Source: Octopus sinensis (taxonomy: Eukaryota). From it: DNA of 64,000 bases. Shown here one piece after another: positions 2,516-46,850 of this stretch. A model generated the notes under the pieces. The model did not search any database, was not told where the DNA came from, and saw nothing but the letters and a program-made list of their open reading frames with translations. The DNA lies in assembly GCF_006345805.1 (NCBI RefSeq), contig NC_043023.1, positions 10,478,001 through 10,542,000 of the forward strand, written 5' to 3'. Position 1 is the stretch's first letter. Each line of letters begins with the position of its first letter. The position numbers and the translations under genes are program-made.

Positions 2516-3155
2516 GTATAACCCTGTTTCTATAAATATTTACTGAATTACTGCAAAATATATCTTCTGAACTCTGACATATATGTAGCAAAATTTCTCT
2601 TCTTTATTGTCTGGAATACACAGAAAATTATATTTGCATATTAATTAATCATTTAGCATTTAAACTAGCACAAATATTCTGACCCTGCCGTGTCAGTTTA
2701 AACATAAACAATCAAATCACTGAAGTCTCAAAGCTATGAGATAATCCATGATTAATTCAAAACAATATGAATAAATAAGCATTACATTTCACAAAGGAAT
2801 CTCAATGCTAAACGGTTAAACTGGCCATATTTTTGTGTGTTTTATATTCATACTAGCCAGATCCCACCCCTCACACCCACCCTACAAGGTCATTCTAAAA
2901 GTAAACAATCACAACATTGAAATCTGAACATGATAACATAATGAATGATTAATTCAGAAGAATTTCAATAAACATTATATTTGACTGATTAATCTGAATG
3001 TTAATGAGTTAAAGCAATTAAGAAGGCAGTTTGCAGCATCTTCAGATATTAACAAAGATCACTTTTGATGAGATATATCAGTAGAAATATTTGTTCAGAG
3101 CAATATACGAGAAGAAGGAAAACCTTTGTGAACTGTGACAAGAGAAAGGAACATT

Positions 3156-6794: not shown

Positions 6795-7000
6795 ATGTTT
6801 GTGTGTCTGTGTTTGTCCCCCTAGCATTGCTTGACAGCTGATGCTGGTGTGTTTATGTCCCCGTAACCTAACGGTTCGGCAAAAGTCACCGATAGAATAA
6901 GTACCAGGCTTACAAAGAATAAGTCCTGGTGTCGAGTTGCTCGATTAAAGGCGGTGCTCCAGCATGGCCGCAGTCAAATGACTGAAATAACTAAAAAAAG
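6573..7000 (+). mobile_element. tRNA-derived SINE with internal (TA)n/(TG)n
   Basis: Head ggcgcaggagtgactgtgtggtaagtagc...gggttcagtccc (A/B-box-like), CORE-like ccttgggcaagtg, tail aaatgactgaaataa; same family recurs at 16750-17122 (-) and 24291-24674 (+). Confidence 0.75.
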
Positions 7001-7046
7001 AAAAAGAGGAAAAACGCAAAGTAAATAAATTTTTAAACTAAGTAAT

Positions 7047-7219
7047 CTTTTACTTGTTTCGGTCATTTGACTGCGGCCATGCTGGAGCACGGCCTTTAAT
7101 CGAGCAACTCGACCCCGGGACTTATTCTTTGTAAGCCCAGTACTTATTCTATCGGTCGCTATTTCCGAACCGCTAAGTGATGGGGACATAAACACACCAG
7201 CATCGGTTGTCAAGCAATG
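7047..7219 (-). mobile_element. Inverted 3'-half copy of the same SINE (tail-to-tail pair)
   Basis: Reverse complement of 6825-6995 with scattered mismatches. Confidence 0.8.
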
Positions 7220-9403
7220 TAATTTAATTGTTCATTTTGAATTGATAAAATGTGTTTTTTTTCTAATTTTTTAGATATATATATATTATATTGTGAAATT
7301 TGATTTAGTATTTCTAAATTGAATTTTTTTCCTTGTGAGTTTGGATTTATATTCCCTCAAATAATTATTATATGTATGTATATATATATATCATGGTGAT
7401 CTATGTAAAGGGCATCTATACTGCTTTGCACAAAAAACACCCATACATGTACCCTGTGAGAAGATCTCAACACATTCTCTAAATTTGGATGATTGTAATC
7501 GTCGTAAGCAACGGTGTATCAGTTTTTTATGTGTGTATGTGCGTATATAAAGATATAATTAAAACAAAACGTATACACCCACATATATACATATATATAT
7601 ATGTACATAAATATATATACTAATTATATACGTTTTTATTATTACTTTTTGACTTTTTATTGTTATTTTAATTTTAATATTTCTATTATATGTAATTTTC
7701 TAGATGGTGTAATTTAATTGTTCATTTTGAATTAATAAAAGGTGGTGTTTTTTTTCTGTATATTTATTATATTGTGTGAAATTTGATTTAGTAATTCTAA
7801 ATTGAATTTTTTTCCTTATAAGTTTGGATTTTATTCCCTCAAATAATAATTATATATATATATATATACATACTCAAAATAAGCAACAAGAATGACTCCG
7901 GTAATTTGGTATGATCGTTTCGTACTACATCATTTTATTAAATGTTGTAAGTATTACAACAGTTTTAAAATGCTGAGCACTCATCAGCCAATTATAGAGG
8001 TTTTCCATTAATACAAAACTTTTCAAATCAAGTGGCAACATGATAGAGAAGGTAGATATATAGACAAAGATGTGGATTTAAATGTTAAGAACTTATGAGG
8101 TAGTGGAGTCCACTGACTGACTAAAATCTGGTTGTTCTGACTGCTGTAAGGTTAGAAGCAATAAAGATTTTTTAATTGTAGAAATTGGGTACTCCATAAA
8201 AGGAATTCATGTTGAAGGGAGCAAAAGAAAGCCTAATGGTGCGAATCTTGTAAAACTCCTTTAGGGACCAGTTTAATCAGAATCTACCGGATCTGAAGCA
8301 TATTTGTAGAAAAGAAATATTCAATTTTCTCAATGTTCTGAAGAAGCAAATCTTCACCTAGATATTATCAGTAGAGTTTAACATATGAGAGAAAGAGAAA
8401 CAAAATAGAATTTACAAGACTGTCATTCACTATAATCATTTCAGCCCACCATCCATCAGTGCTTCTCAGGTGAGATGCTGTTCAGGTGTGTCTTGTCAGG
8501 TGACTTGTCAAAAGGTACCTCATACTTTAATTTCTGATGTTCTTATTTCAATTCAAATACATTTTTGTATTTGGTATATGTCAAGCTTCTTGCAGTTTCC
8601 ATCTACCAAATCCTTTCCCAAGGTTTTGATTGGCCACTCTGGGACTGAACCTAGAACCATCTGATTGGGAAGCCAACTTCTTACCACACAACCGTCCCTG
8701 CACCTCTGTGGTCATGTCTATATAAAAATATAGAAAAACTTTCACTGTTTTAATCTCTCTAATTCCTAATTATCTTGTATGTTTTACACTGTTGTTTCTC
8801 TTTCGTTTCAGATTATCAGATGACATCTGCTTCACAGGATTTTTACATAAGCAACGTCATTAGAATGGAAAGTCTTTTGAAGACTGAGCAAAGATGTTAT
8901 ACAAAACACGTAAAACCCTGTTTCTATAAATATTTACTGAATTACTGCAAAATATATCTTCTGAACTGACATATGTTATGAAATTTCTCTTCTTTATTGT
9001 CTGGAGTACACAGAAAATTATATTTGTATTTGAATTAATCCTTTAGCATTTGTACTGGCCGTATCAGTCCCAAAAGTTCAAGCTATTTTATGTTAAAACT
9101 GCCCACATCTGGCCTCTTATACTCACCTGGCAATGTCATTCTAAACATAAAGAATCACATCGTTGAAATCTAAAAGCAATAAGATAATGAATGATTAATT
9201 CAGAAGAATTTGAATAAATAATCATTACATTCGACAGAGTAATCTGCGTGTTAATGAGAAGTAATTAAGAAGGCAGTTTGCAGCATCTTCAGATATTAAC
9301 AAAGATCACTATTGATGGAGATATATCAGTAGAAATATTTGTTTAGAGCAATATACGAGAAGAAGGAAAACCTTTGTGTACTGTGACGAGAGAAAGGAAA
9401 ATT

Positions 9404-11133: not shown

Positions 11134-11684
11134 TATATATATGAAGCTGTGTAACTTCTCATATATATTTGAAGGTGCATGGCTCAATCGTGAGTTCAAT
11201 TTCCATTCATCTTCATTACATTGAACAATGTTAAAGGGTCAAAGTGAAATGCAGCCACATTTTCTCTACAAAACTACTTTAAAACGTTTTCCAATGGCTG
11301 AATGACGAAACGTATTAATCTGGTTTCTGCCCTAAATATTCTGTTTAAGTAAGGATGCATCTTGTACACCAGCAAATACTCAGTGAAGTGCAAGTTAATT
11401 CATAATTAGTCAACGCCGTTGCCAAACACTGAAGTATCTTGTTTAATAATTTGGCTAATTTAGTGAAATTCAAAAGTTACTCCAATACTGATTCGGTGTA
11501 AGGAATAAAAACCTACTTATTTCCCCTTTAATTTCTATTTACTTTCTTAAATCTCCCATACTGAAGGATTATGCTTATTAGAGCCATGCTATCCATGCCA
11601 ACCGTGTACAATTACTAACATTTTCTCACACTAAACTATCCCTCTTACTAAAAATATCCTTCTTCTAGAGGATGGGGTTTAGTC

Positions 11685-12070
11685 AACTGGTACTTATTTT
11701 ATCGACCCCGAAACGATGTAAGGCACAATCGACCGTGGTGGAATTTGAACTGGGAACTGTGGGATGACGTCAGCGGCTAGGAAGCTGACCGGAAGAGGGA
11801 GGGTTGGGGCGATTGCGCCCTTTTCGATCGGGGAAGTTGTGAGTGCAGGACGTGTCAGTGCTTCGACCAGGTGAGGGATAGCAGCTGCTATTTTTAGCGT
11901 TTCGGGACGGGCCACGTGGAAGGGTACATTACCATCGGACAGATATGGGTCAACGAAGAGAAGGTGAGTGTCTTACTTCTAATCTCCCGCATTCACTACG
12001 AACGTAGCGTCGGTCGAAATAGCGGTTAGCATTTCGTCCGGCGTGCTAACGATCCTGCCAGCTCGCCGCC
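11685..12070 (-). mobile_element. tRNA-derived SINE split by the 246-bp promoter block
   Basis: 11685-11757 and 12004-12070 are the reverse complement of adjacent parts of the intact SINE at 38631-38842 (ggcggcgagctggcagaatcgttagcacgccgg...); GAAC lies on both sides of the insert. Confidence 0.75.
11758..11963 (+). promoter_or_regulatory. Putative promoter and non-coding exon 1 of locus D
   Basis: Local CpG-rich island; CRE TGACGTCA 11765-11772; ETS CCGGAAG 11789-11795; donors CAG|GTGAGG (11870/1) and consensus AAG|GTGAGT (11963/4). Confidence 0.65.
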
Positions 12071-12108
12071 CTGCAAAATACGTTAGATGCTTTGGGCAGA
12101 TAGGTTGT

Positions 12109-12203
12109 CCAAGCGGTCACCCATCTAAGTACCCTGCAGGCTGGACATTGCTTCACTTCGGTGATCAGGCGAGACAAGGTGCAATCAGCATTATATGGCT
12201 GTA
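12109..12203 (-). pseudogene. 5S rRNA-derived sequence (pseudogene or SINE3-type head)
   Basis: Minus strand tacagccata...tctcgcctgatcaccgaagtgaagcaatgtccagcc...gtacttagatgggtgaccgcttgg follows the metazoan 5S rRNA pattern (box A- and box C-like parts retained, 3' end missing). Copies at 20494-20587, 29319-29413 and 45856-45950. Confidence 0.8.
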
Positions 12204-13981
12204 ATAACAATATTAACAGTTTCAAAACATTCGCATTTTCTGAAGGTGGTAAAGTAGAGTTTGGTCAGTCGCTCGTACAAGTTATTCTCCTTGATATAAT
12301 TGTTTCTTCAGTTATCTGCTAGGAATAAAGTTTTTATTAAAAGGCCTACTGATTGTGGTTTGGGGGAGTTAGTAACTACCATCGACCTCTTGTACTGACT
12401 GGGTCTTTATTTTATTCATCCCAAAGCAATGAAAGGTAAAATTGACATCGTTGGGATTTCGTTTCGGTAATTAAAGCAAACCAATGTATGTTTTATACAT
12501 TCCCCTTTTTTATAAGTTTTTGTCGGTGATATTTCTGGTGTCAGATATTCTTTGATCTCGTCTGAAATTAATGATTTTTCTGGATGAATTTCTACTTTTG
12601 TATCAAAACTGAAGGGGAAAGGACTATTTCGAAGATAACGAGTGAGATTAAATTGTGAGTGAAGTAATAATTTCTTCTTATTTTATATTAAATTTCGTTT
12701 TCTCTTTGTACAAACCTGTTTTAGTGGGAAATCTTAACAATATTCAAGATTTCTTTACATTTTCCCGATCATAAATGCTATTTGTAAACCTGCTGAAATT
12801 ATGAAGATTAAGTTATTTATAGAAAAATATGTTTTTATGAAATTTGCTATAGATACCATTCAGAATGTGTATATTAGAATTCTATCGGAATTTAATATGA
12901 AAATATAAATTTGGTGGGCTCGTACACATGAAAGTTAAAATTTTTAAAGAAATTCTGGATTTGTCTCAGTATGTATGTGTATTTGTGTGTCTTTGTGTTA
13001 GTGTTTCTTCCCCTCCCATTCCCGCTTAACGAACGGTGTTGGTATATTTACATCCCTGGAACTTTCGGCAGTAGACTGATAGAATGAGTTCTAGGCATAA
13101 AAGAACAAACAAGTTCTCGAGTCGATCCAATCTCACTACAGATTCTTCAAGGAGATTCCCCAGCGTGGTGGCAGTCTAATGACAGAAACAAGTAAAAGAT
13201 AATAATAATAATAATTAATTCGTTTATTGGCCGCAAGGGCTAACAAAAATCAATTATAACAAGCTATTTACCACACAGCCACTCCTGCGCCTATAAAAAG
13301 ATGTAGTAAAACTTTCACTGTTTTAATCTCTCTAATTCCTAATTATCTTGTATGTTTTACACTGTTGTTTCTCTTTCGTTTCAGATTATCAGATGACATC
13401 TGCTTTACAGAATTTTTACATAAGCAACGTCATTAGCATGGAAAGTATTTTGAAGACTGAGCAAAGATGTTATACAAAACACGTATAACCCTGTTTCTAT
13501 AAATATTTACTGAATTACTGCAAAATATATCTTCTGAACTCTGACATATGTAGCAAAATTTCTCTTCTTTATTGTCTGGAGTACACAGAAAATTATATTT
13601 GCATATTAATTAATCGTTTAGCATTAAACCTGGCCGTATCAGTCCCAAACGTTCAAGCTATTTTACGTTAAAACTGCCCACATCTGGCCTCTTCCACTCA
13701 CCCTGCAATGTCATTCTAAACATAAACAATCACATCATTGAAATCTTAAAGCAATAAGATAATGAATGATTAATTCAGAAGAATTTGAATAAATAATCAT
13801 TAGATTTGACAGTGTAATCTGCGTGTTAATGAGTTAAAGTAATTAAGAAGGCAGTTTGCAGCATCTTCAGATATTAACAAAGATCACTTTTGATGGAGAT
13901 ATATTAGTAGAAATATTTGATATGAGCAATATACGAGAAGAAGGAAAACCTTTGTGTACTGTGACGAGAGAAAGGAAAATC

Positions 13982-15409
13982 ATGGAAAAGGAATTTTGTG
14001 AAAGAACTGATTTTTCTGATGATGTAAACAAAGAAAAGGGCAAAATATCATATGATTGTGATATTTGTGGTAAATTCTTCTCTAGGAAAGCTAGCTTACT
14101 CATTCACAAACGCATTCATACAGGAGAGAAGCCATATCATTGTGATATCTGTGGTAAGTCCTTCTCCCAGACTGGTTCTATAATTATTCACAAGCGTAAT
14201 GTTCACACAGGAGAGAAACCATATTGCTGTGAAATCTGTGGTAAATCATTCTCACAAGGTAATGACCTGACTAAGCACAGATGCGTTCATACAGGTGAAA
14301 AGCCATATCACTGTGTTACCTGTGGTAGATCGTTCTTTCGAAATCATGTCTTGGCTAGGCACAGACGCATTCATACAGGAGAGAAGCCATATCATTGTGA
14401 TATCTGTGGTAAGTCCTTCGCTCAGACTAGTTCCGTGACTATCCACAAGCGTAACGTTCACACAGGAGAAAGACCATATCGCTGTGAAATCTGTGGTACA
14501 TCATTCTCTCGAAATAATGGCTTGACTAGGCACAGACTTATTCATACAGGAGAGAAGCCATATCACTGTGATATTTGTGGTAAAACATTCACTCAAAATA
14601 ATGGTTTGACTAGGCACAGACGCATTCATACAGGAGAGAAGCCATATCACTGTGATATCTGTGGAAAATCATTCTCTGAAACTAGTCCCTTAAGTATTCA
14701 CAAGTGTGTTGTTCACACAGGAGAAGAACTATATAACTGTGAATTCTGTGGTAAATCATTCTCTCAAAATAATGACTTGGTTAATCACAAACGCATTCAT
14801 ACAGGAGTGAAACCATATCACTGTTATATTTGTGGTAAATCATTCTGTGAAGATATAAACTTAACTAATCACATACGTATTCACACAGGTGAGAAGCCAT
14901 ATCAGTGCGATATCTGTGGTAAATCATTCTCTCACGGACCCAATTTAGCTGTTCACAAACATGTTCATTCAAGTGTGAAGCCATATCACTGTGAAATCTG
15001 TGGTAAATCCTTCTCTCGAAACGATTACTTAACTTGCCATAAGCGTGTTCATACAGGAGATAAGCCATATCACTGTGATATCTGTGGTAAATCCTTCTCT
15101 CAAGATAATCACTTAACTAAGCACAAACGCATTCATACAGGTGAGAAGCCATATCACTGTGAAATCTGTGGTAAATCATTCTCTCAAAATGAACAGTTAC
15201 CTAAGCATATGCGTGTTCATACAGGAGAAAAGCCATATCACTGTGAAATCTGTGGTAAATCATTCTCTCAAAATGAACAGTTACCTAAGCATATGCGTGT
15301 TCATACAGGAGAAAAGCCATATCACTGTGAAATCTGTGGTAAATCTTTCTCTCGAATTTATAACTTAACTCGTCACAAACGTACTCACACAGGTGAAATG
15401 GCATATTGA
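13982..15409 (+). CDS. C2H2 zinc-finger protein, locus D (16 fingers, most divergent paralogue)
   Basis: ATG 13982 (alternative in-frame ATG 13922); shorter acidic leader; diverse helices; two consecutive identical [12 protein letters not shown] fingers; stop supplied by the downstream insertion. Confidence 0.9.
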
Positions 15410-16749: not shown

Positions 16750-17122
16750 TACTCTTTACTCTTTGACTTGTTTTAGTCATTTGACTGTGGCCATGCTAGA
16801 GCACTGCCTTTAGTCGACCCTAGGACTTATTGTATCAGTCTCCTTTGCCGAACTGCTAGGTTACAGGGACGTAAACACACCAGCATCGGTTGTCAAGCAA
16901 TGTTGGGTGGACAAACACAGACACACAAACATACACACACATACATATACATATATACGACGGGCTTCTTTCAGTTTCCGTCTACCAAATCCACTCACAA
17001 GGCTTTGGTCGACCTGGGGCTATAGTAGAAGACACTTGCCCAAGGTGCCACGCAGTGGGACTGAACCTGGAACCATGTCGTTGATAAACAAGCTACTTAC
17101 CACACAGCCACTCCTATGCCTA
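16750..17122 (-). mobile_element. tRNA-derived SINE in the 3' block of locus D
   Basis: Reverse complement of the 6573/24291 family; interrupts aaattttat|..ggtaaaatatttttc, which is contiguous in the other paralogues. Confidence 0.8.
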
Positions 17123-18500: not shown

Positions 18501-19323
18501 ACTGTAAGCGAAATAGCCCTTAAAACATGCACCAATTTTGTTTCTTTACTTGTATAATCATAATACAATTTGCAAATGAAAAAACACAAATTCGCAAAAC
18601 TTTTCCAGGCAATCCTGAAAATAAAGAAGACATAAGGGGTTAAAAACTACTTGAAAATGTCTTCCAATGGTTGTATGAGGAAACATCTTAACCATCTGGT
18701 GGTGCAGTTCTGTATTTTTCATGGTTTAGCTATTTTTAGTACATTTTATTACTTTAAATGTGTTTTAAAGCAATAATATTACCAAAAACTGTAATCTGAT
18801 ATAATGTATTTATTTAACATGTAAGCAAAAAACAAATGAATGCTCTTTGAAAATGAAAGTGAAACTAGATAAAAGTATCTTATGGTGAGGAGAGTGGTCC
18901 TTTCATATTCACTGTTTACTCATTGTTTGCACTCTCATCCTCATCACTCTGAGCAAAGAAGTCGATGCAGATGTGCATAGCATGTTGCAAGCAGATTGGC
19001 TTGGAGAACTTTTGGAAGCAAACAGAAGTGGGATTTAACATACTCCATAGCATATTTGCATAGTTCCGACACTATGTATGCACATAGATTAATTTCCCCT
19101 TTTAATTAGAATTTCAAACAGACGTTTATTGTCCTCTTGGCGAACAGAATTTTATTGTCATATATTTGAGAAAAATTGCGTTAACTGTATTTATTTCTCT
19201 GTAATAAATGTTATATTTTTTAAAAAGGAAGACTACATCTCTTTGCCCTTTTCTTATGCCTGTTGGGGCCATGCTATGCATACCAACCTCATGCATTACT
19301 AACATTTTCTCACACTAAACTAT

Positions 19324-20247
19324 GACTTGCCTGACGACCTCATGCAACACACACTTCTATTTGCCAATGATGTCAAACTGGTCGCTCCTCGCGGTGATAT
19401 AGATGATCTTCGTCAATGCCTCCACCAAGTTTGGAGATGGTCTAACGAATGGGACCTGTGTCTGAACGTGTCAAAGTGCTGTCATCTGCCTGTTGGCTCT
19501 TCTCCTGCAACTCAACTTGATTTCGAGCCGGGTTGTCTGCTGCTGGAGAGGACCGACCAGGTAAAGGACCTGGGTATCTTGGTGGATTCTTCCTTTTCGC
19601 CTTCAGCCCAGTGCGTCCATGCTGCCAACAAAGCACGCAGAGTTCTGTTTTTGATTCGATGGTTATTCGGAATGCTCACAGCAGCCATATTCCTACCGCT
19701 CTATGTCACGCTGGTGAAACCCATATTGGAGTGCGGGATTCAAGCCTCTTCTCCTTATCTCCTGAAAGACATACATCATTTCAAAAGAGTCCAGAAGCTG
19801 GCTACCCACATGGTTCTTGGTCTCAAGCATTTGTCTTATGAAGAAAGGCTGAAGACGCTCGACCTTTATTCTCTAGAAAAACGCCGCCGCGGTGCTGATC
19901 TCATTCTCGCTCACAACATCATAAGCGGAAAGTGTAACCTCTCAAAAGAGCTGTTCTTCACTCCTGCACCAGAGCGTCGGCTGCGGGGTCACTCCGACAA
20001 ACTCTATCTGCAACGATTTCATCTCAATCGAAGGAGAGGGGCTTTCTCTGTCAGGGTTGCGGATCCGTGGAATAAGCTGCCGGACGAGATAATGAAGATG
20101 GCGACGACCGCTCGGTTCAAAGTCTCTCTTGACCAGAAATGGCCTGAATTCTTTGCATGAACACCCTCCCTGTACATAACACCATGTCCCCCTACATGGC
20201 CTTGCTTTTTGCTTTTTGAGCCAAAAAATTAACTTAACCTAACTTAC
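19324..20247 (+). mobile_element. 5'-truncated CR1-clade LINE (RT C-terminus + 3' UTR)
   Basis: ORF 19327-20160 with LFANDVKL (FADD decayed), W..W.L.LN..KC, KDLGI, FSVRVADPWNKLP; tail taacttaacctaactta; possible CTAT duplication; empty site readable at ~11635. Confidence 0.88.
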
Positions 20248-20289
20248 CTATCTCTCTTACTAAAAATCTCTTCTAAAGGCACAACGCCT

Positions 20290-20457
20290 GAAATGTGGGG
20301 AGTTGGCTAGTCGATTACATCGAGTCCAGTGTTTAACTGGTAACCATTTTATCAACCCCGAAAGTATAAAAAGCAAAGTCGATCTTGACAGAATTTGAAC
20401 TCAGAACGTCGCGAAACATTTTGTCCAGCACGCTAACGATTCTGCCAGTTCGCTGCC
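20290..20457 (-). mobile_element. tRNA-derived SINE, uninterrupted counterpart of the promoter-containing SINE
   Basis: Same upstream flank (cttactaaaaat) and same downstream 5S-derived neighbour as 11685-12070, but reads tttgaactcaGAACgtc with no 246-bp insert. Confidence 0.7.
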
Positions 20458-20587
20458 TTAGAAATGTGAGTGAGATACTTTCATCATGTACGCTTCCCAA
20501 GTGGTCATCCATCTAAGTACTCGGTAGGCTCGACATTGCTTAACTTCGATGATCGCACGAAAACCGGTGCATTCTACTTGATATGGC

Positions 20588-21050
20588 TTTAATGGCCGTT
20601 GCCAGCACCGCCCCGACTGGCCTCCATGCTGGTGGCACGTAAAAAGCACCATCGAATTGTGGCCGTTTGCCAGCCTCGCCTGGCACCCGTGCCGGTGCAA
20701 CGTAAAAGGCACCATCCGATTGTGGCCGTTTGCCAGCCTCGCCTGGCACGTAAAAAGCACCATCCGATTGTGGCCGTTGCCAGCCTCGTCTGGCCTCCAT
20801 GCCGGTGGCACATAAAAAGCACCATCTGATCATGGCCGTTTGCGCGCCTCGTCTGGCACCTGTGCCGGTGGCACGTAAAAGCATCCACTACACTCACGGA
20901 ATGGTTGGCGTTAGGAAGGGCATCCAGCTGTAGAGACACTGCCAGATCAGACTGGAGCCTGGTGCAGCCTTCTGGCTTCCCAGACCCCAGTTGAATCGTC
21001 TAACCCATGCTAGCATGGAAAACGGACGTTAAACGATGATGATGATGATG
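20588..21050 (+). mobile_element. RTE-LINE 3'-tail-derived element with internal tandem repeats and (GAT)n tail
   Basis: ggcacgtaaaaagcaccatc... repeats, then ggttggcgttaggaagggcatccagc...ggacgttaaacgatgatgatg, matching the 3' end of the RTE element at 57550-57723. Confidence 0.75.
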
Positions 21051-21830
21051 AATCATAACAGTTTTAAAACATTTTTCGTATTTTCTAAAGGTGGTATATT
21101 AGTTCGTGTCAGTTATTCACCTTGATATAATTGTTTCTTCAGTTATCCGCTAGGGGCAAAATCGATCGACCTAATATTGGGGTTGTAGAGTGATTAGTGT
21201 CTGTCATCGATTTCTGTTTTTGATAGATCTTTATTTTATTGATTCTGAAGCATCTGAAGCAATGACAGGTAAAATTTGACATCGGCAGGAGTTGACCTCA
21301 GAAGATAAAAGAAACATAAGTAACACTGCATTACCTAATTTCGTTTCGGGATTTAATGAAAACCATTACGTATTTTATAAATTCCCCGTTTACACAATTT
21401 TTGTCATGGTTCATTTTAGGGTCAGATATTCTTTGACCTCGTCCGAAATTAATGATTTTTCTCGATGAATTTCTACTTTCGTATCAAAACTGCTGGGGGG
21501 AAAGACTATCGGAGGATAAGGAGTGATATTAAATGGTGAGTAAAGTAATAATTTCATTTTGTTTTTATATTAAATTTCGTTTTCTCTTTGTACAAACCTG
21601 TTTTAGTGGTAAATCTTAACAATATTCAAGATTTCTTTACATTTTCCCGATCATAAATGCTATTTGTAAACCTGCTGAAATTATGAAGATTAAGTTACTT
21701 ACAGAAAAATGTATATGTATTAATGAGATTTGCTACAAATACCATTCAGAATGTGTATATTAGAATTCTATCGGAATTTAATGTGAAAATATAAATTTGT
21801 TGGGTTCGTCCTCATTCATTACTGACACAT

Positions 21831-22135
21831 AGTTAAGTTAAGTTGATTTTTTGGCTCAAAAAGCAAAAAGCAAGGCCATGTAGGGGACATGGAGTTATGT
21901 ACAGGGAGGGTGTTCATGCAAAGAGTTCAGGCCATTTGAGGTCAAGGGAGACTTTGAACCGAGCGGTCGTCGGCATCTTCACTATCCACGGATCCGCAAC
22001 CCGGACGGAGAAAGCCCCTCCCCTTCGATTGAGATAAAATCGTCGCAGGTAGAGCTTTTCGGAGTGACCCCACAGCCTACGCTCTGGAGCAGCCTTTCTT
22101 CATAAGACAAATGCTTGAGACCAAGAACCACATGT
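21831..22135 (-). mobile_element. Inverted, internally deleted 3' fragment of the same CR1 LINE
   Basis: Reverse complement of parts of 19808-20240, including the tail. Confidence 0.85.
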
Positions 22136-22679: not shown

Positions 22680-23499
22680 CTCGACATGCTAGAAACAGCA
22701 GCTAAACAACGAATCACTAATTCAAATTTTTATTCCCCCCACCACCCCTTCTCGACATGCTAGAAACAGCAGCTAAACAACGAATCACTAATTCAAATTT
22801 TTATTCGCCCCACCCCCTCTTCTCGACATGCTAGAAACAGCAGCTAAACAACGAATCACTAATTCAAATTTTTATTTCCCCCACCACCCCTTCTCGACAT
22901 GCTAGAAACAGCAGCTAAACAACGAATCACTAATTCAAATTTTTATTTCCCCCACCACCCCTTCTCGACATGCTAGAAACAGCAGCTAAACAACGAATCA
23001 CTAATTCAAATTCTTATTTCCCCCACCACCCCTTCTCGACATGCTAGAAACAGCAGCTAAACAACGAATCACTAATTCAAATTTTTATTCCCCCCACCCC
23101 CTTCTCGACATGCTAGAAACAGCAGCTAAACAACGAATCACTAATTCAAATCTTTATTCCCCCCACCCCGCTTCTCGACATGCTAGAAACAGCAGCTAAA
23201 CAACGAATCACTAATTCAAATTTTTATTCCCCCCACCCCCCTTCTCGACATGCTAGAAACAGCAGCTAAACAACGAATCACTAATTCAAATCTTTATTCC
23301 CCCCACCACCCCTTCTCGACTTGCTAGAAACAGCAGCTAAACAACGAATCACCAATTCAAATTTTTATTCCCCCCACCCCCTCTTCTCGACATGCTAGAA
23401 ACAGCAGCTAAACAACGAATCACTAATTCAAATTTTTATTCCCCCCACCCTCTTCTCGACATGCTAGAAATAGCAGCTAAACAACGAATCACTAATTCA
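22680..23499. repeat. Minisatellite, ~70-bp unit x12
   Basis: tcgacatgctagaaacagcagctaaacaacgaatcactaattcaaatttttattcccccaccacccctt starts at 22681, 22752, 22823, 22894, 22965, 23036, 23105, 23175, 23245, 23316, 23387 and 23456. Confidence 0.95.
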
Positions 23500-23971
23500 G
23501 ATTCCATCCCACTCTTTTTTTCATTGCTAGAGAGGTGGGGAGAAATCTGGTGCAGTCTTCTGACTGGCCACCCCCTGCCAAAGCATCCAGCCAATACTGG
23601 CATTGAAGACAGACATTAAATTATGAGGATCAAAAAACAAGGCTCCTAGCATTTTGCCGTGCTTGAAAAGACACATCAAGCTAAGTAAAAGTATGGTTGG
23701 CCTTGCATACAAGCTTATCTCTTTTATTGAAATCTTAAAGCAATAAGACAATGAATGATTAATTCAGAAGAAATTTCAATAAATAATCATTACATTTGAC
23801 AGAGTAATCTCAATGTTAATGAGTTAAAGCAATTAAGAAGGCAGTTTGCAGCATCTTCAGATATTAACAAAGAACACTTTTGATGGAGATATATCAGTAG
23901 AACTATTTGTTCAGAGCAATATACGAGAAGAAGGAAAACATTTGTGTACTGTGACGAGAGAAAGGGAAATT

Positions 23972-24290: not shown

Positions 24291-24674
24291 CTGAGTGGCT
24301 GTGTGGTAGGTAGCTTGTTTACCAACCACATGGTTCCAGTTTCAGTCCCACTGCGTGGCACCTTGAGCAAGTGTCTTCTGCTATAGCCTCGGGCCGACCA
24401 ATGCCTTGTGAGTGGATTTGGTAGACGGAAACTGAAAAGAAAACCGTTGTATATATGTATATGTATATGTGTGTGTGTGTCTGTGTTTGTCCCCCTAACA
24501 TTGCTTGACAACCGATGCTGGTGTGTTTATGTCCCCGTCACTTAGCAGTTCGGCAAAAGAGACCGATAGAATAAGTACTGGGCTTACAAAGAATAAGTCC
24601 CGGGGTCAAGTTGCTCGATTAAAGGCGGTGCTCCAGCATGGCCACAGTCAAATGACTGAAACAAGTAAAAGAGT
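24291..24674 (+). mobile_element. tRNA-derived SINE
   Basis: Same family as 6573-7000; near full length, tail aaatgactgaaacaagtaaaagag. Confidence 0.8.
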
Positions 24675-25797
24675 GTATAAACCTTTTGTGCTATTTAAAG
24701 CCTGCTCACTGTATTTGGCTATCTGATGTCATCAATAGTAAGGATTCAAATGACACTGGACTTACTTGAGGCATTCTTTCATCTCAGTCGAGACAAGAAT
24801 ATGAGAAAAAGAGAAGAGAAATAGAATTTACAAACTACTATTTAGTATGATTGCTTCAACACATCATTCATTAGTGACTTGTCAAAAGGTACCTCATATT
24901 TAAAGTTTCTGTTTTGCTTAATCCAATTAGGATTCATTTTCGTATTTGGTTTATGTCAAGCTTCTTTTAGTTTCCATCTACCAAATCCTCTCCCAAGGCT
25001 TTGATTGGCCACTCTGGGACTGAACCCAGGACCTTGTGGTTGGGAAGCCAACTTCTTACCACACAACCATCCCTGCACTTCTACAGCCATGTCTATATAA
25101 AAATGTAGTAAAGCTTTCACTGCTTTAATCTCTCTAATTCCGAATTATCTTGTATGTTTTACACTGTTGTTTCTCTTTCGTTTCAGATTATCAGATGACA
25201 TCTGCTTCACAGGATTTTTATATAAGCAACGTCATTAGAATGGAAAGGCTTTTGAAGACTGAGCAAAGATGTTATACAAAACACGTATAACCCTGTTTCT
25301 ATAAATATTTACTGAATTACTGCAAATTATATCTTCTGAACTGAAAGAAGTAATCACATCACTGAAATCTCAAATCTATGAGATAATCCATGATTCATTG
25401 AAAATAATTTGAATAAATAAGCATTACATTTGAGAAAGGAATCTGAATGCTTAAGGGTATTTCACTAAAATATTTACAAGTTCTTTATTCAAACCTGCCA
25501 GATCCTACCGCTCACACCCACCCTACAATGTCATTCTAAACGTAAAGAATCATATCATTGAAATCTTAAATCTGTAAGATAATGAATGATTAATTCAGAG
25601 GAATTTGAATAATCATTACATTTGACAGAGTAATCTGAATGTTAATGAGTTAAAGCAATTAAGAAGGCAGTTTGCAGCATCTTCAGATATTAACAAAGAT
25701 CACTATTGATGGAGATGTATCAGTAGAAATATTTGTTAAGAGTAATATACGAGAAGAAGGAAAACCTTTGTGTACTGTGACGAGAGAAAGGAAAATT

Positions 25798-28338: not shown

Positions 28339-28956
28339 GCTATGTAACTTCTCATATATATTTGAAGGCGCATGGCTCAATCGTGAGTTCAATTCCCGTC
28401 ATCTTCATTACATTGAACATTGTTAAAGGTTAAAGGGTCAAAGCGAAATGCAGCCACATTTTCTCTACAAAACTACTTTAAGACGTTTTCCAATGGCTGA
28501 ATGACGAAACGTATTAATCTGGTTTCTGCCCTAAATATTCTGCTAAAGTAAGGATGCATCTTGTACACCAGCAAATACTCAGTGAAGTGCAAGTTAATTC
28601 ATAATTAGTCAACGCCGTTGCCAAACACTGAAGAATCTTGTTTAATAATTTGGCTAATTTAGTGAAATTCAAAAGTTACTCCAATACTGATTCGGTGTAA
28701 GGAATGGAAACCTACTTATTTCCCCTTTAATTTCTATTTACTTTCTTAAATCTCCCATACTGAAGGATTATGCTTATTAGAGCCATGCTATCCATGCCAA
28801 CCGTGTACAATTACTAACATTTTCTCACACTAAACCATCCCTCTTACTAAAAATATCCTTCTTCTAGAGGATGGGGTTTAGTCAACGGGTACTTATTTTA
28901 TCGACACCTAAACGATGAAAGACCCAATCGACCATGGTGGAATTTGAACTGAGAAC

Positions 28957-29173
28957 TGTGGGATGACGTCAGCGGTTAGGAAGCTGACCGGAAGAGGAAG
29001 GGCGCGCATAGGGTAGGGGCGATTGCGCCTTTTTCGATCGGGGAAGTTGTGAGTGCATGACGTGTCAGTGGTTCGACCAGGTGAGGGATAGCATCTGCTA
29101 TTTTTAGCGTTTCGGGACGGGCCACGTGGAAGGGTACATTACTATCGGACAGATAACGGTCAACGAAGAGAAG
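28957..29173 (+). promoter_or_regulatory. Putative promoter/exon 1 of locus F (inside antisense SINE)
   Basis: CRE 28964-28971, ETS 28988-28994, donor AAG|GTGAGT 29173/4; GAAC at 28953 and 29210. Confidence 0.65.
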
Positions 29174-31337
29174 GTGAGTGTCTTACTTCTAATCTCCCGC
29201 ATTCACTACGAACGTAGCGACGGTCGAAATAGCGGTTCGCATTTCGTCCGGCGTGCTAACGATCCTGCCAGCTCGCCGCCCTGGAAAATACGTTAGATGC
29301 TTTGGGCAGATAGGTTGTCCAAGCGGTCACCCATCTGAGTAACCTGCAGGCTCGACATTGCTTCACTTCGGTGATCAGGCGAGACAAGGTGCAATCAGCA
29401 TTATATGGCTGTAATAACAATATTAACAGTTTCAAAACATTCGCATTTTCTGAAGGTGGTAAAGTAGAGTTTGGTCAGTCGCTCGTACAAGTTATTCTCC
29501 TTGATATAATTATTTCTTCAGTTATCTGCTAGGAGCAAAGTTTTTATTAAAAGGCCTACTGATGGTGGTTTGGGGGAGTTAGTAACTACCATCGACCTCC
29601 TGTTTTGAATGGGTCTTTATTTTATTCATCCCAAATCAATGAAAGGTAAAATTGACATCGGTGGGATTTCGTTTCGGTAATTAAAGCAAACCAATGTATG
29701 TTTTATACATTCCCCTTTTTTATAAGTTTTTGTCGGTGATATTTCTGGTGTCAGATATTCTTTGATCTCGTCTGAAATTAATGATTTTTCTGGATGAATT
29801 TCTACTTTTGTATCAAAACTGAAGGGGAAAGGACTATTTCGAAGATAACGAGTGAGATTAAATTGCGAGTGAAGTAATAATTTCTTCTTATTTTATATTA
29901 AATTTCGTTTTCTCTTTGTACAAACCTGTTTTAGTGGGAAATCTTAACAATATTCAAGATTTCTTTACACTTTCCCGATCATAAATGCTATTTGTAAACC
30001 TGCTGAAATTATGAAAATTAAGTTATTTATAGAAAAATACGTTTTTATGAAATTTGCTATAAATACCATTCAGAATGTGTATATTAGAATTCTATCGGAA
30101 TTTAATATGAAAATATAAATTTGGTGGGCTCGTGCACATGGAAGTTAAAACTTTTAAAGAAATTCTGGATTTGTCTCAGTATGTATGTGTATTTGTGTGT
30201 TAGTGTTTCTTCCCCTCCCATTCCCGCTTAACAAACGGTGTTGGTATATTTACATCCCTGGAACTTTCGGCAGTAGACTGATAAAATGAGTGCCAGGCAT
30301 AAAAAACAAGTAAGTACTGGGGTCGATCCAATTTCACTACAGATTCTTCAAGGAGATTCCCCAGCGTGGTGGCAGTCTAATGACAGAAACAAGTAAAAGA
30401 TAATAATAATAATAATTAATTCGTTTATTAGCCACAAGGGCTAACAAAAATCAATTATAACAAGCTACTTACCACACAACCACTCCTGCGCCTATAAAAA
30501 GATGTAGTAAAACTTTCACTGCTTTAATCTCTCTAATTCCTAATTATCTTGTATGTTTTACACTGTTGTTTCTCTCTCGTTTCAGATTATCAGATGACAT
30601 CTGCTTCACAGGATTTTTACATAAGCAAAGTCATTAGAATGGAAAGGCTTTTGAAGACTGAGCAAAGATGTTATACAAAACACGTATAACCCTGTTTCTA
30701 TAAATGTTTACTGAATTACTGCAAAATATATCTTCTGAACTCTGACATATATGTAGCAAAATTTCTCTTCTTTATTGTCTGGAATACACAGAAAATTATA
30801 TTTGCATATTAATTAATCATTTAGCATTTAAACTAGCACAAATATTCTAACCTCTCACACTCACCCTGCAGTGTCAATTTAAACATAAACAATCAAATCA
30901 CTGAAGTCTCAAAGCTATGAGATAATCCATGATTAATTCAAAACAATATGAATAAATAAGCATTACATTTCACAAAGGAATCTCAATGCTAAACGGTTAA
31001 ACTGGCCATATTTTTGTGTGTTTTATATTCATACTAGCCAGATCCCACCCCTCACACCCACCCTACAAGGTCATTCTAAAAATAAACAATCGCAACATTG
31101 AAATCTGAACATGATAACATAATGAATGGTTAATTCAGAAGAATTTCAATAAACATTCTATTTGACAGAGTAATCTGAATGTTAATGAGTTAAAGCAATT
31201 AAGAAAGCAGTTTGCAGCATCTTCAGATATTAACAAAGATCACTTTTGATGGAGATATATCAGTAGAAATATTTGTTAAGAGCAATATACAAGAAGAAGG
31301 AAAACCTTTGTGTACTGTGACGAGAGAAAGGAACATT

Positions 31338-33603: not shown

Positions 33604-33980
33604 TCTATATATATAAAGCTGAAGTTGTCTGTGTGTGTGTGTGGCAGGTTTTGCAGCCTTCAACTAACACTATCTCCTCCGAGACCCTGCGGTGCAAGTT
33701 GAACAAAACTGAGAGTATGATAAAAGAAGGCTTGCTCTTCCGTACTTAGAAGAAAAAATTCAAATAGGACTAAGTTAACACCAAAATTTATTTCCATCAA
33801 AAAGGTGCTTTTTTCTTCTATGAAAATCCCTATATATTATGATTCTTTGACTGCTGTGTTGCCATTTTTTTTTGGTGTATTTCAACCAGAAAACTGTTCA
33901 CTTTCCTAGATAATGCAAAATTTTCAAAACTTCCAATTCTAAAGGGTCAGAAAAAAAAAACACCCGAGCAATGCCGGGCG

Positions 33981-33982
<2 letters not shown>
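33604..33982 (+). mobile_element. Non-autonomous Helitron (family 1); terminal CTAG replaced by (TA)n
   Basis: A|TC start; hairpin CCCGagcaatgcCGGG 33963-33978 runs directly into the TA microsatellite. Confidence 0.7.
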
Positions 33983-34011
<29 letters not shown>

Positions 34012-36256: not shown

Positions 36257-36366
36257 TCTCTGAAGAGGCCGTGGGGCATCCTTGTTAATGCCTCATTTAT
36301 ACCTGCCTTTATGGCTTATAGGTTAAATGAGGTATGACTGCCCTTACTGCCGAAACAGCTGTCAGA
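36257..36366 (+). ncRNA. Minimal type-I hammerhead ribozyme motif (Penelope-type)
   Basis: tct-CTGAAGA-ggc[long stem II including atgcctcattta/taaatgaggtat]gcc-GAAA-cagctg-TC^aga: intact core, palindromic stem III, GUC site at 36361-36363. Confidence 0.7.
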
Positions 36367-36547
36367 TATGATATAATTATATATTATATTTTATATTTCT
36401 ATTTCCTTGTCTATTTATATTTACTATATATTTTGTATAATGCCTTTACTGATATGTAATGGTGTAATAAAGTATTGATTGGGTATCATCTGATAGTTGA
36501 TGTTTTATTGATTTAAGTATGTTTCTCCATTTTCTAATTTTGTAGTT

Positions 36548-36557
36548 ATATATACAT

Positions 36558-36609
<52 letters not shown>

Positions 36610-36654: not shown

Positions 36655-36694
<40 letters not shown>

Positions 36695-38624: not shown

Positions 38625-38842
38625 TCTTAAGGCGGCGAGCTGGCAGAATCGTTAGCACGCCGGGCGGAATACCTGGCCGTATTTCGTCTGTTTTTTATGT
38701 TCTGAGTTCAAATTCCGCCGAGGTCGACTTTGCCTTTCATCCTTGCGGGGTCGATAAATTAAGTACCAGTTGCGTACTGTGGTCGATCTAATCGCTGCCC
38801 CTCTCACTCCAAATTTCTGGCCTTGTGCCTAGAGTAGAAAAG
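38625..38842 (+). mobile_element. Full-length tRNA-derived SINE with 12-bp target-site duplication
   Basis: GATATAATTGTT on both sides (38613-38624, 38843-38854); empty site at ~12294 and ~29503; paralogous copy at 58946-59164. Confidence 0.88.
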
Positions 38843-44869: not shown

Positions 44870-45493
44870 TATATATATGAAGCTGTGTAACTTCTCATAT
44901 ATATTTGAAGGTGCATGGCTCAATCGTGAGTTCAATTTCCATTCATCTTCATTACATTGAACAATGTTAAAGGGTCAAAGTGAAATGCAGCCACATTTTC
45001 TCTACAAAACTACTTTAAAACGTTTTCCAATGGCTGAATGACGAAACGTATTAATCTGGTTTCTGCCCTAAATATTCTGGTAAAGTAAGGATGCATCTTG
45101 TACACCAGCAAATACTCAGTGAAGTGCAAGTTAATTCATAATTAGTCAACGCCGTTGCCAAACACTGAAGAATCTTGTTTAATAATTTGGCTAATTTAGT
45201 GAAATTCAAAAGTTACTCCAATACTGATTCGGTGTAAGGAATGGAAACCTACTTATTTCCCCTTTAATTTCTATTTACTTTCTTAAATCTCCCATACTGA
45301 AGGATTATGCTTATTAGAGCCATGCTATCCATGCCAACCGTGTACAATTACTAACATTTTCTCACACTAAACCATCCCTCTTACTAAAAATATCCTTCTT
45401 CTAGAGGATGGGGTTTAGTCAACTGGTACTTATTTTATCGACCCCGAAACGATGAAAGGCACAATCGACCATGGTGGAATTTGAACTGGGAAC

Positions 45494-45710
45494 TGTGGGA
45501 TGACGTCAGCGGCTAGGAAGCTGACCGGAAGAGGAAGGGTGCGTAAAGGGTTGGGGCGATTGCGCCCTTTTCGATCGGGGAAGTTGTGAGTGCATGACGT
45601 GTCAGTGCTTCGACCAGATGAGGGATAGCATCTGCTATTTTTAGCGTTTCGGGACGGGCCACGTGGAAGGGTACATTACCATCTGACAGATATGGGTCAA
45701 CGAAGAGGAG
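45494..45710 (+). promoter_or_regulatory. Putative promoter/exon 1 of locus H (inside antisense SINE)
   Basis: CRE 45501-45508, ETS 45525-45531; first donor lost (GT>AT at 45618), second donor GAG|GTACGT 45710/1. Confidence 0.6.
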
Positions 45711-46850
45711 GTACGTGTCTTACTTCTAATCTCCCGCATTCACTACGAACGTAGCGTCGGTCGAAATAGCGGTTAGCATTTCGTCCGGCGTGCTAACGAT
45801 CCTGCCAGCTCGCCGCCCTGCAAAATACGTTAGATGCTTTGGGCAGATAGGTTGTCCAAGCGGTCACCCATCTAAGTACCCTACAGGCTGGACATTGCTT
45901 CACTTCGGTGATCAGGCGAGACAAGGTGCAATCAGCATTATATGGCTGTAATAACAATATTAACAGTTTCAAAACATTCGCATTTTCTGAAGGTGGTAAA
46001 GTAGAGTTTGGTCAGTCGCTCGTACAAGTTATTCTCCTTGATATAATTATTTCTTCAGTTATCTGCTAGGAGCAAAGTTTTTATTAAAAGGCCTACTGAT
46101 GGTGGTTTGTGGGACTTAGTCTCTACCATCGACCTCTGGTATTGGCTGGGTCTTTATTTTATTCATCCCAAATCAATGAAAGGTAAAATTGACATCGTTG
46201 GGATTTCGTTTCGGTAATTAAAGCAAACCAATGTATGTTTTATACATTCCCCTTTTTTATAAGTTTTTGTCAGTGATATTTCTGGTGTCAGATATTCTTT
46301 GATCTCGTCTGAAATTAATGATTTTTCTGGATGAATTTCTACTTTTGTATCAAAACTGAAGGGGAAAGGACTATTTCGAAGATAACGAGTGAGATTAAAT
46401 TGTGAGTGAAGTAATAATTTCTTCTTATTTTATATTAAATTCGTTTTCTCTTTGTACAAACCTGTTTTGTGGGAAATCTTAACAATATTCAAGATTTCTT
46501 TACATTTTCCCGATCATAAATGCTATTTGTAAACCTGCTGAAATTATGAAGATTAAGTTATTTATAGAAAAATATGTTTTTATGAAATTTGCTACAAATA
46601 CCATTCAGAATGTGTATATTAGAATTCTATCGGAATTTAATATGAAAATATAAATTTGGTGGGCTCGTACACATGACAGTTAAAATTTTTAAAGAAATTC
46701 TGGATTTGTCTCAGTATGTATGTGTATTTGTGTCTTTGTGTTAGTGTTTCTTCCCCTCCCATTCCCGCTTAACAAACGGTGTTGGTATATTTACATCCCT
46801 GGAACTTTCGGCAGCAGACTGATAAAATGAGTGCCAGGCATAAAAAACAA

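What the first reader, a model, noticed from the sequence alone, without database searches (positions are those of the whole stretch)
11685..12070. ZF promoter and first exon are nested inside an antisense tRNA-SINE, with an empty-site paralogue in the window
Seen: in D, F and H a ~246-257-bp CpG-rich block (CRE TGACGTCA, ETS CCGGAAG, consensus donor AAG|GTGAGT in D and F) separates two adjacent halves of a minus-strand SINE and is bounded by GAAC on both sides. At 20290-20457 the paralogous SINE, with the same flanks, is uninterrupted (tcaGAACgtc). Inference: a portable promoter/exon module was inserted into the SINE (or precisely excised in E) and then amplified with the ZF genes; the origin of the block is unknown.
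Basis: partly seen in the sequence, partly recalled or inferred. Interest (0 to 1): 0.75.

Follow-up and report, generated by a model that had tools for sequence, protein, structure and literature searches.

The report
Promoter-like insert splitting an octopus SINE
In an Octopus sinensis zinc-finger gene cluster, one roughly 250-base CpG-rich, promoter-like piece of DNA of unknown source was inserted into a SINE retroposon and then copied three times along with the genes. The structure is real, but nothing here shows that it is the genes' promoter or that it is a mobile module.

Summary
The structural observation is confirmed. The window is Octopus sinensis chromosome CM016885.1, a tandem C2H2 zinc-finger (ZF) cluster. 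In three 94-98% identical segmental copies, a 246/257-bp block (11758-12003, 28957-29213, 45494-45750) splits a minus-strand SINE exactly between its A-box and B-box halves. GAAC is duplicated at both junctions. A diverged paralogue with homologous flanks (SINE 20268-20457) and two further copies of the family (38631, 58952) are uninterrupted, so this is one insertion event that duplication then amplified.

The block has the highest CpG density in the window. It holds the window's only TGACGTCA, CCGGAAG and CACGTG, and has a 5' splice-site consensus in all three copies, all in the sense of the ZF genes. A promoter plus leader exon is therefore plausible but unproven:
- no transcript data could be reached;
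- the ATG is missing in one copy;
- the only annotated CDS found starts in the ZF exon;
- a second candidate first exon, conserved upstream of six ZF genes, lies about 650 bp downstream of the block.

The "portable module" idea has no support: no terminal repeats, no LTR ends and no other copies. Interest is modest.

The parts
11658..11757 (-). D copy, 3' part of the SINE (B box GAGTTCAAATTCC-like, central region, tail). It ends at the target GAAC, 11754-11757 on the + strand.
   Evidence: Alignment with uninterrupted copies; profile hit to model positions 68-146 at 11757-11679.
11758..12003 (+). D copy of the inserted CpG-rich block (242 bp plus the second GAAC at 12000-12003). It contains CRE 11765-11772, ETS 11789-11795, E-box 11913-11918, ATG 11946-11948 and a donor AAG|GTGAGT with the exon ending at 11964.
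12004..12070 (-). D copy, 5' part of the SINE (head with A-box-like TGGCAGGATCG).
   Evidence: profile hit to model positions 1-76 at 12070-11995.
12088..12206 (-). 5S-rRNA-like element directly upstream (in the SINE's sense) of the SINE head. It is decayed.
   Evidence: Rfam RF00001, full-length match, 25.5 bits, E 0.006 in the local search.
28857..29280 (.). F copy of the whole composite: SINE 3' part 28857-28956, block 28957-29213 (257 bp; no ATG; donor AAG|GTGAGT), SINE 5' part 29214-29280. The 5S-like element is at about 29298-29416.
45394..45817 (.). H copy of the composite: SINE 3' part 45394-45493, block 45494-45750 (257 bp; ATG present; donor GAG|GTACGT), SINE 5' part 45751-45817. The 5S-like element is at 45835-45953.
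20268..20457 (-). E: paralogous SINE, uninterrupted, with a single GAAC at 20404-20407 (the empty site).
   Evidence: profile positions 1-198, E 3e-53.
20477..20594 (-). E: 5S-rRNA-like element next to the SINE, in the same arrangement as in D.
   Evidence: Rfam RF00001, 56 bits, above the gathering score of 38.
19326..20241 (+). E: non-LTR retrotransposon fragment (C-terminal ORF 19327-20160), inserted between the left flank and the SINE tail with a duplicated ctaaactat-like target.
   Evidence: There was no Pfam hit, so the LINE assignment rests on the look of the C-terminal sequence (inference).
38631..38826 (+). K: independent, uninterrupted insertion of the same SINE family with a 12-bp target duplication, gatataattgtt. 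D 12290-12301 is its empty site. L (58952-59150) is the segmental copy.
12459..12689 (+). Candidate ancestral core promoter and first exon ('exon 1-prime'). TATAAG at 12511, conserved GTCAGATATTC at 12540, ending TTAAATT|GTGAGT at 12648-12660. Paralogues lie at 21341-21571, 29669-29899, 39079-39309, 46206-46436 and 59401-59632.
   Evidence: E, K and L read ATG|GTGAGT, in frame with the ZF-exon acceptor. Function is inferred only.
13385..13482 (+). Candidate 98-nt internal exon (acceptor tttcag|, donor CAC|GTATAA, in-frame ATG at 13393), present upstream of all eight ZF exons examined.
   Evidence: Its flanks are equally conserved, so exon status is not shown.
13862..15409 (+). ZF exon of gene D (acceptor tttgcag|CAT). 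The annotated CDS of 495 aa starts at ATG 13922.

Best explanation
Proposed history, with shown and inferred steps marked.

Step 1 (shown). A Pol III-type SINE (A box, B box, target duplications, multi-copy) lay next to a 5S-rRNA-like element in the 5' spacer of an Octopus sinensis C2H2 ZF gene.

Step 2 (insertion shown; mechanism and donor unknown). One piece of foreign DNA, about 242-253 bp, GC-rich and CpG-rich, was inserted 4 bp upstream of the B box. A 4-bp target duplication (GTTC on the SINE strand, GAAC on the + strand) marks the site. The insertion separates the A and B boxes by about 250 bp.

Step 3 (shown). The composite was carried along when a unit of at least 3 kb (the previous gene's 3' flank, the spacer and the intron) was duplicated in tandem. 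This gave three 94-98% identical copies upstream of ZF genes D, G and I.

Step 4 (inferred). The block acts as an upstream, CpG-type Pol II promoter with a short leader exon for these three genes.
- CRE and ETS sites sit in its first 40 bp.
- An E-box, an ATG in good context (two of three copies) and a consensus 5' splice site lie 150-210 bp further on.
- All of these are in the sense orientation of the ZF genes.

The block is probably an additional or replacement promoter, not the family's original one. A TATA/Inr-like candidate first exon, conserved in all six spacers, lies about 650 bp downstream. Its ATG is intact only in the three spacers that lack the block.
For: Structure:
- Exact colinearity of the two SINE pieces with uninterrupted copies, plus the GAAC duplication.
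- Abutting profile hits, model positions 1-76 and 68-146.
- Paralogous empty site with homologous flanks on both sides.
- Segmental copies at 94-98% identity.

Promoter reading:
- Highest CpG density in the window; CpG o/e 1.0 against 0.64.
- The only CRE, ETS and E-box motifs in the 64 kb, invariant in all three copies.
- A donor consensus kept in all three copies even though H differs at three bases there.
- The motif combination occurred 0 times in 20,000 shuffles.
- Sense orientation, 1.85, 2.0 and 4.5 kb upstream of intact ZF ORFs.
- In D, the block's ATG, plus the 98-nt candidate exon, plus the ZF exon form one open frame.

Ancestral-exon context:
- Six copies of the conserved segment, one per ZF gene with an open leader frame. 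ATG|GTGAGT appears only in the units without a block.
Against: - No transcript, CAGE or chromatin data could be reached.
- The only annotated CDS found (495 aa) starts at 13922 inside the ZF exon.
- No protein in the searched collections contains the peptide that the block exon or the 98-nt exon would encode. Coverage of O. sinensis proteins there is clearly incomplete, though.
- The block's ATG is absent in F.
- The 98-nt exon's donor is GT>AT in the unit downstream of H.
- The block is no better conserved than its flanks among the three young copies: 4.7% variable columns against 5.7% and 2.8%.
- ZF genes F, H and J keep intact ORFs without any block.
- The motifs were chosen after seeing the sequence.
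Confidence: 0.5

Rival explanations
1. The block is an inert insertion. It is captured filler DNA at a staggered break, or a fragment of an unrecognised repeat (for example a retroelement 5' region or an atypical solo LTR). Its motifs and donor-like site are not used. The ZF genes are transcribed from the conserved segment about 650 bp downstream or from elsewhere.
For: - A better-conserved candidate first exon exists in every spacer, with or without the block.
- Genes F, H and J are intact without a block.
- The ATG is lost in one block copy.
- The annotated CDS does not use the block.
- The 4-bp target duplication fits LTR-type or break-repair insertions.
Against: - Four independent promoter or exon signals are concentrated and correctly ordered in 210 bp, in the sense orientation. 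They are unique in 64 kb and absent from 20,000 shuffles.
- There are no TG..CA ends, no terminal repeats and no second copy that would mark a repeat family.
- The exon-1-prime ATG is lost exactly in the units that carry the block.
Confidence: 0.3
2. The block was already present in the common ancestor of the D-type and E-type spacers, and E lost it by precise deletion between the two GAAC repeats.
For: - Four-base direct repeats can mediate deletion.
- E has other deletions in the same SINE, including an 18-bp one only 8 bp away.
- D and E have exchanged sequence by gene conversion: 98-100% identity at 12682-12803 against about 75% in the SINE. Unit phylogeny therefore cannot polarise the event.
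Against: - A deletion that restores the family sequence base for base is rare.
- Every other copy of the family lacks the block, so an insertion is needed in any case.
- This scenario adds an extra, improbable step.
Confidence: 0.1
3. The block is one member of a mobile family of promoter/leader-exon cassettes that insert with a 4-bp target duplication and seed ZF transcription units.
For: A clean 4-bp duplication at a precise site, and a compact unit holding promoter motifs plus a donor.
Against: - Only one insertion event is visible.
- No terminal structures.
- No other copy in the 64-kb window, in contig L002 or in the O. bimaculoides ZF locus L003.
- No ORF-level relatives in the public protein sets.
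Confidence: 0.07
4. The two SINE pieces are independent partial insertions that happen to flank an older promoter.
For: None beyond the general abundance of SINE fragments in the window.
Against: - The two pieces have the same orientation.
- Their breakpoints are exactly complementary at one family position, with 4 bp shared.
- The paralogue E has the same flanks and an intact element.
Confidence: 0.01

Closest known systems
Octopus tRNA-derived SINEs (OK, OR1, OR2; Ohshima & Okada 1994, as cited in PMC4824008)
   Same: Short, multi-copy octopus retroposon with an internal A-box/B-box Pol III promoter and target duplications. There are several independent insertions in 64 kb.
   Different: The family name could not be assigned.
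- tRNA models do not recognise the head.
- A comparison with the MIR/CORE consensus, as I recalled it, was not significant.
- None was found in 22 kb of an O. bimaculoides ZF locus.
5S-rRNA-derived SINE heads (SINE3 type) and 5S pseudogenes
   Same: A full-length 5S-like sequence directly upstream of, and in the same orientation as, the SINE in both D and E.
   Different: The K and L copies of the SINE start cleanly at GGCGGCGAG after their target duplication and have no 5S part. The 5S-like piece is therefore a neighbour, not the head of this SINE.
Alternative or replacement promoters acquired by insertion in lineage-specific tandem zinc-finger clusters (for example mammalian KRAB-ZNF clusters)
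   Same: Tandem segmental duplication carries the promoter region and the ZF exon together. The paralogues differ in their 5' ends.
   Different: The inserted piece is not itself a recognisable transposable element. It sits inside one, in antisense. Promoter use is not demonstrated.
Solo LTRs and other nested transposable-element insertions with 4-6-bp target duplications
   Same: A precise insertion with a 4-bp duplication, containing promoter-type motifs.
   Different: No TG..CA termini, no inverted ends, no other copies. It also contains a splice donor and an ATG, which LTRs do not need.
Common 5' exon spliced to alternative ZF exons (Drosophila lola / mod(mdg4) type loci)
   Same: There are fewer promoter-like blocks (3) than ZF exons (about 10). 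An annotated 867-aa model spans more than 21 kb across several ZF exons, and P0121 joins two ZF segments.
   Different: This is purely a lead. No splice evidence was available, and each of six ZF genes has its own candidate first exon.

Membership tests
tRNA-derived SINE | Internal Pol III promoter: an A box and a B box at tRNA-like spacing | tested here: met
   TGGCAGAATCG and GAGTTCAAATTCC-like boxes are present in K, L, E and (split) in D, F and H, by direct reading and alignment.
tRNA-derived SINE | Head recognisable as a tRNA (cloverleaf or sequence) | tested here: not met
   ARAGORN finds 0 genes in the window. The Rfam search found no tRNA hit at E<=10 on the best-preserved copy.
tRNA-derived SINE | Retroposon hallmarks: target-site duplication and many dispersed copies | tested here: met
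   12-bp duplication gatataattgtt around K and L, with the empty site in D at 12290-12301. At least 4-5 independent insertions by profile search.
CORE-SINE superfamily (for example octopus OR1) | Conserved ~60-bp CORE central domain | tested here: inconclusive
   Local alignment to the MIR consensus written from memory scored 24, against a shuffle mean of 26.6. No authentic OR1 or CORE sequence was available.
5S ribosomal RNA (gene, pseudogene or SINE head) | Match to the Rfam 5S covariance model over its full length | tested here: met
   E scores 56 bits, above the gathering score of 38. D scores 25.5 and H 26.6 bits, below gathering but full length.
Solo LTR | TG...CA termini with short inverted ends and a 4-6-bp target duplication | tested here: not met
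   The block starts TGTGGG and ends CACTAC. No inverted ends were found. Only the 4-bp duplication fits.
MITE / cut-and-paste DNA transposon | Terminal inverted repeats and multiple copies | tested here: not met
   No terminal inverted repeats. nhmmer finds only the three segmental copies.
Pol II CpG-type promoter with first exon | CpG enrichment, clustered activator sites, and a downstream 5' splice site in the sense of the gene | tested here: met
Pol II CpG-type promoter with first exon | Transcription start and spliced transcripts mapped to it | not testable with these tools
   No RNA or chromatin data were available. The protein collections hold no product that includes the putative exon.

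The most novel reading that the evidence does not exclude
The block is a copy of an undescribed, TIR-less mobile cassette (promoter plus leader exon plus splice donor) that inserts with a 4-bp target duplication, possibly at Pol III-bound sites. Such cassettes would supply new transcription starts to expanding octopus ZF genes whose original start codon has decayed.
Probability: 0.07. Interest if true: 0.8.

Novelty: new member of a known kind. Interest (0 to 1): 0.33.

Why it matters
Octopus genomes carry very large, young C2H2 ZF expansions, and how the new copies acquire or keep transcription is not known. If the block is active, this locus shows a datable promoter gain: an empty-site paralogue, a filled site, then amplification. 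The gain coincides with loss of the start codon in the older first exon. That would be a compact example of promoter turnover inside a tandem gene family, and it could be tested directly with public RNA data. If the block is inert, the locus is ordinary nested-repeat architecture.

Tried and rejected
- Whole ZF ORF against the protein database. It returned only generic ZNF hits of at most 57% identity and no species-level help.
- Spliced N-terminal peptide (block exon + 98-nt exon + leader). It returned only P0121, a partial O. sinensis model without those exons. A full HMMER search of the leader gave the same result.
- Block translated in its long minus-strand open frame, to fish for other copies through called ORFs. 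No hits and no Pfam domain.
- Exact look-ups of the other ZF ORFs, to find annotated ranges or transcript contigs. None is on record. The D protein is not in the cluster table.
- Metagenome scans for the block and, as a control, for the SINE core. Both were empty, so the negative is uninformative.
- nhmmer with the block profile against the window, L002 and L003. Only the three known copies were found.
- Search for terminal repeats or LTR ends. None were found.
- CpG retention in D-type SINE copies against other copies, as a proxy for germline hypomethylation. The differences are too small to use: o/e 1.3-1.4 against 1.1-1.15.
- Conservation of the block against its flanks among D, F and H. 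The copies are too young to be informative.
- Literature. Nothing was found on this locus or on SINE-embedded ZF promoters in octopus. Sequence-string searches found nothing relevant.
- CORE-SINE assignment from the recalled MIR consensus. Not significant, so dropped.

Full report
**Where the window comes from.** The D ZF ORF, read from its first ATG (13922-15406), is an annotated 495-aa product on Octopus sinensis GCA_006345805.1, chromosome record CM016885.1 at about 10.49 Mb. The window is a tandem cluster of single-exon C2H2 ZF arrays on the + strand: ORFs at 6, 3132, 9374, 13856, 25672, 31212, 42509, 50213 and 63012. It is 35% GC with CpG o/e 0.64.

**Checking the observation.** A self-comparison shows three copies of the queried region: 11601-12250, 28800-29460 and 45337-45997, at 94.6-96.5% identity. 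Each lies within a longer segmental copy of about 3 kb.

In the three-way alignment, the block starts TGTGGGATGACGTCAG directly after GAAC and ends CACTACGAAC. It spans 11758-12003 in D (246 bp, with an 11-bp deletion) and 28957-29213 and 45494-45750 in F and H (257 bp each).

I removed the block and one GAAC and aligned the rest, as reverse complement, with the element at 20268-20457 (E) and with two plus-strand elements at 38631 (K) and 58952 (L). The alignment is colinear through the junction:
- D ...CGCTACGTTC|CCAGTTCAAATTCC
- E ...CGCGACGTTCTGAGTTCAAATTCT
- K ...TTTTATGTTCTGAGTTCAAATTCC

A profile built from four copies hits D, F and H as two abutting pieces, model positions 1-76 and 68-146. 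The element is therefore one SINE split by an insertion with a 4-bp target duplication. The idea of two independent half-elements is excluded.

**The SINE.** K and L carry a clean 12-bp target duplication (gatataattgtt), and D 12290-12301 is their empty site. The profile finds at least four or five independent insertions in the window. The head has A-box-like and B-box-like motifs, and the block sits 4 bp upstream of the B box.

Neither ARAGORN nor the Rfam tRNA model (nothing at E<=10) recognises a tRNA. 'tRNA-SINE' is therefore plausible from the literature on octopus SINEs (Ohshima & Okada 1994, cited in PMC4824008) but was not demonstrated here. My attempt to link the central region to CORE-SINEs through a MIR consensus recalled from memory was not significant.

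K and L lack it, so it is a neighbour and not part of the SINE.

**The empty-site paralogue.** E shares the following with D:
- the 5S-like element;
- the SINE;
- the sequence just beyond the SINE tail, ATTTTTAGTAAGAG;
- the left flank, E 19254-19323 = D 11569-11639;
- the right flank, E 21051 onward = D 12209 onward.

E differs in three ways. It has a non-LTR retrotransposon fragment (19326-20241) with its own target duplication. It has a GC-rich minisatellite at 20595-21050. And it lacks the block.

D-E identity is mosaic: about 75% across the SINE and 5S region, but 98-100% at 12682-12803. The units have therefore exchanged sequence by gene conversion, and unit trees cannot polarise the event. 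The family consensus can: every other copy lacks the block. An insertion happened, and a later precise loss in E would be an extra, unlikely step. I put it at about 0.1.

**What the block looks like.**
- It is 54% GC with CpG o/e 1.0, and the surrounding 650 bp is the densest CpG region of the window.
- TGACGTCA, CCGGAAG and CACGTG occur only in the three blocks in the whole 64 kb, and are invariant among the copies.
- All three copies keep a 5' splice-site consensus about 205 bp into the block: AAG|GTGAGT in D and F, GAG|GTACGT in H.
- D and H have an ATG in good context 18 nt upstream of the donor. F has AAC there.
- In dinucleotide-preserving shuffles the single motifs occur in 0.5-6.7% of trials, and all together in none of 20,000. 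Because I chose the motifs after reading the sequence, this overstates the significance.
- The block has no inverted termini and no TG..CA ends.
- It has no relatives elsewhere in the window, in the O. sinensis contig L002 or in the O. bimaculoides ZF locus L003.
- It has no Rfam match and no protein-level relatives.

Its source stays unknown. The octopus genomes themselves cannot be searched with the tools at hand. The metagenome scans were empty even for the SINE core, so they say nothing.

**Is it the ZF promoter and first exon?**

For:
- It lies in the sense orientation, 1.85, 2.0 and 4.5 kb upstream of three intact ZF ORFs.
- In D, the block's ATG (phase 1), a 98-nt candidate exon (13385-13482, with a strong acceptor tttctctttcgtttcag|) and the ZF exon form a continuous open frame.

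Against:
- The ATG is missing in F.
- The 98-nt exon's donor is mutated in the unit downstream of H, and that exon is no better conserved than its flanks.
- The only annotated CDS on record begins inside the ZF exon.
- No database protein contains the putative upstream peptides. The databases do miss even the annotated D protein, however.

**A second candidate first exon.** A different segment is shared by all six paralogous spacers, and only by them: 12459-12689, 21341-21571, 29669-29899, 39079-39309, 46206-46436 and 59401-59632. One copy lies upstream of each of ZF genes D, F, G, H, I and J.
- It is the best-conserved part of the spacer between diverged paralogues, at 80-94% against 50-65% just upstream.
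- It contains an invariant GTCAGATATTCTTTGA. In the D-type copies a TATAAG lies 31 bp upstream of it.
- In E, K and L it ends TTAAATG|GTGAGTAAAG, an ATG directly followed by a consensus donor. Joined to the ZF-exon acceptor (tttgcag|CAT), this reads [14 protein letters not shown]... in frame.
- That leader frame is open in the six genes that have this segment. It is broken by stops in ZF exons B (3037) and C (9284), which lack it.
- In the three block-bearing units the ATG is ATT, and in F the donor is GC.

My reading, which is inference, is as follows. This segment is the family's older core promoter and first exon. The block is a later, upstream addition confined to the lineage in which the old start codon was lost. 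Whether the block replaced it, supplements it or does nothing can only be settled with transcript data.

**Verdict.** The anatomy is right and more than chance: a split SINE, a 4-bp duplication, an empty-site paralogue and amplification with the genes. The functional label is plausible (about 0.5) but unproven, and the block is not the only or the original candidate first exon. The 'portable module' idea has no support beyond the clean target duplication (about 0.07). The element types need correcting: a Pol III A/B-box SINE of unassigned family sitting next to a 5S-like element. This is a well-documented nested insertion and a testable case of possible promoter turnover in an octopus ZF cluster. 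Interest is modest.

Noticed in passing
window 12459-12689, 21341-21571, 29669-29899, 39079-39309, 46206-46436, 59401-59632: A conserved segment occurs once upstream of each of six ZF genes. It ends ATG|GTGAGT in the three spacers without the block (ATG at 21533, 39271, 59594) and ATT|GTGAGT or ATT|GCGAGT in the three with it. It is a candidate ancestral first exon, in frame with the ZF-exon acceptor.
   Followed up: partly
window 12088-12206, 20477-20594, 45835-45953 (and about 29298-29416): A full-length 5S-rRNA-like sequence lies directly next to the SINE head on the minus strand. The E copy scores above Rfam's gathering threshold. It is a pseudogene or the head of a 5S-type SINE.
   Followed up: partly
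window 3037-3100 and 9284-9350: ZF exons B and C have neither the block nor the conserved first-exon segment upstream. Both have stop codons in the HLQILTK... leader frame that is open in the other six genes, so they are probably decaying copies.
   Followed up: partly
window 13385-13482 and seven paralogous sites (2418, 8812, 25187, about 30585, 42045, 49587, 62342): A 98-nt candidate exon has a strong acceptor and an in-frame ATG, and is present upstream of every ZF exon examined. Its donor is GT>AT at 49685. Its flanks are equally conserved, so its status is open.
   Followed up: partly
window 12682-12923 versus 21560-21900: D and E are 94-100% identical here but only about 75% identical in the SINE/5S region 600 bp away. 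This suggests a gene-conversion or recombination boundary near the candidate first-exon donor.
   Followed up: no
window 19326-20241: A fragment of a non-LTR retrotransposon (277-aa C-terminal ORF, GC about 50%) is inserted with a target duplication, tail to tail with the E SINE. It has no Pfam match.
   Followed up: partly
window 20595-21050 and 56283-57561: Related GC-rich minisatellites with units of about 48-110 bp and about 300 bp. The first sits exactly between the E 5S-like element and its right flank.
   Followed up: no
window 22680-23503: A 71-bp tandem repeat with 11.7 copies at 96% identity lies in the decayed E spacer. It is followed at 23726-23920 by a relic of a ZF-exon start.
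   Followed up: no
window 6898-7145 (also about 24300-24700 and 16760-17100): A long hairpin-like repeat gives a sub-threshold Rfam MIR841 hit (103 bits, gathering 200). It is probably a MITE-like element, not a microRNA.
   Followed up: no
window 33970-37850, 53388-55180, 57720-58180: Large low-complexity TA/CA-rich arrays give many spurious mir-297/mir-466-type Rfam hits and a 238-aa pseudo-ORF at 54416-55132.
   Followed up: no
L001 (window 3922-25409) and L002: The genome annotation holds an 867-aa gene model that spans more than 21 kb across several ZF exons. It also holds a partial model (P0121) that joins the end of one ZF array to the leader of another. Either there are read-through transcripts with long-range splicing, or these are gene-prediction artefacts.
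   Followed up: no
window 48780-48995: An inverted fragment of a ZF array lies inside the 2.6-kb extra sequence that separates the H block from its downstream ZF exon.
   Followed up: no
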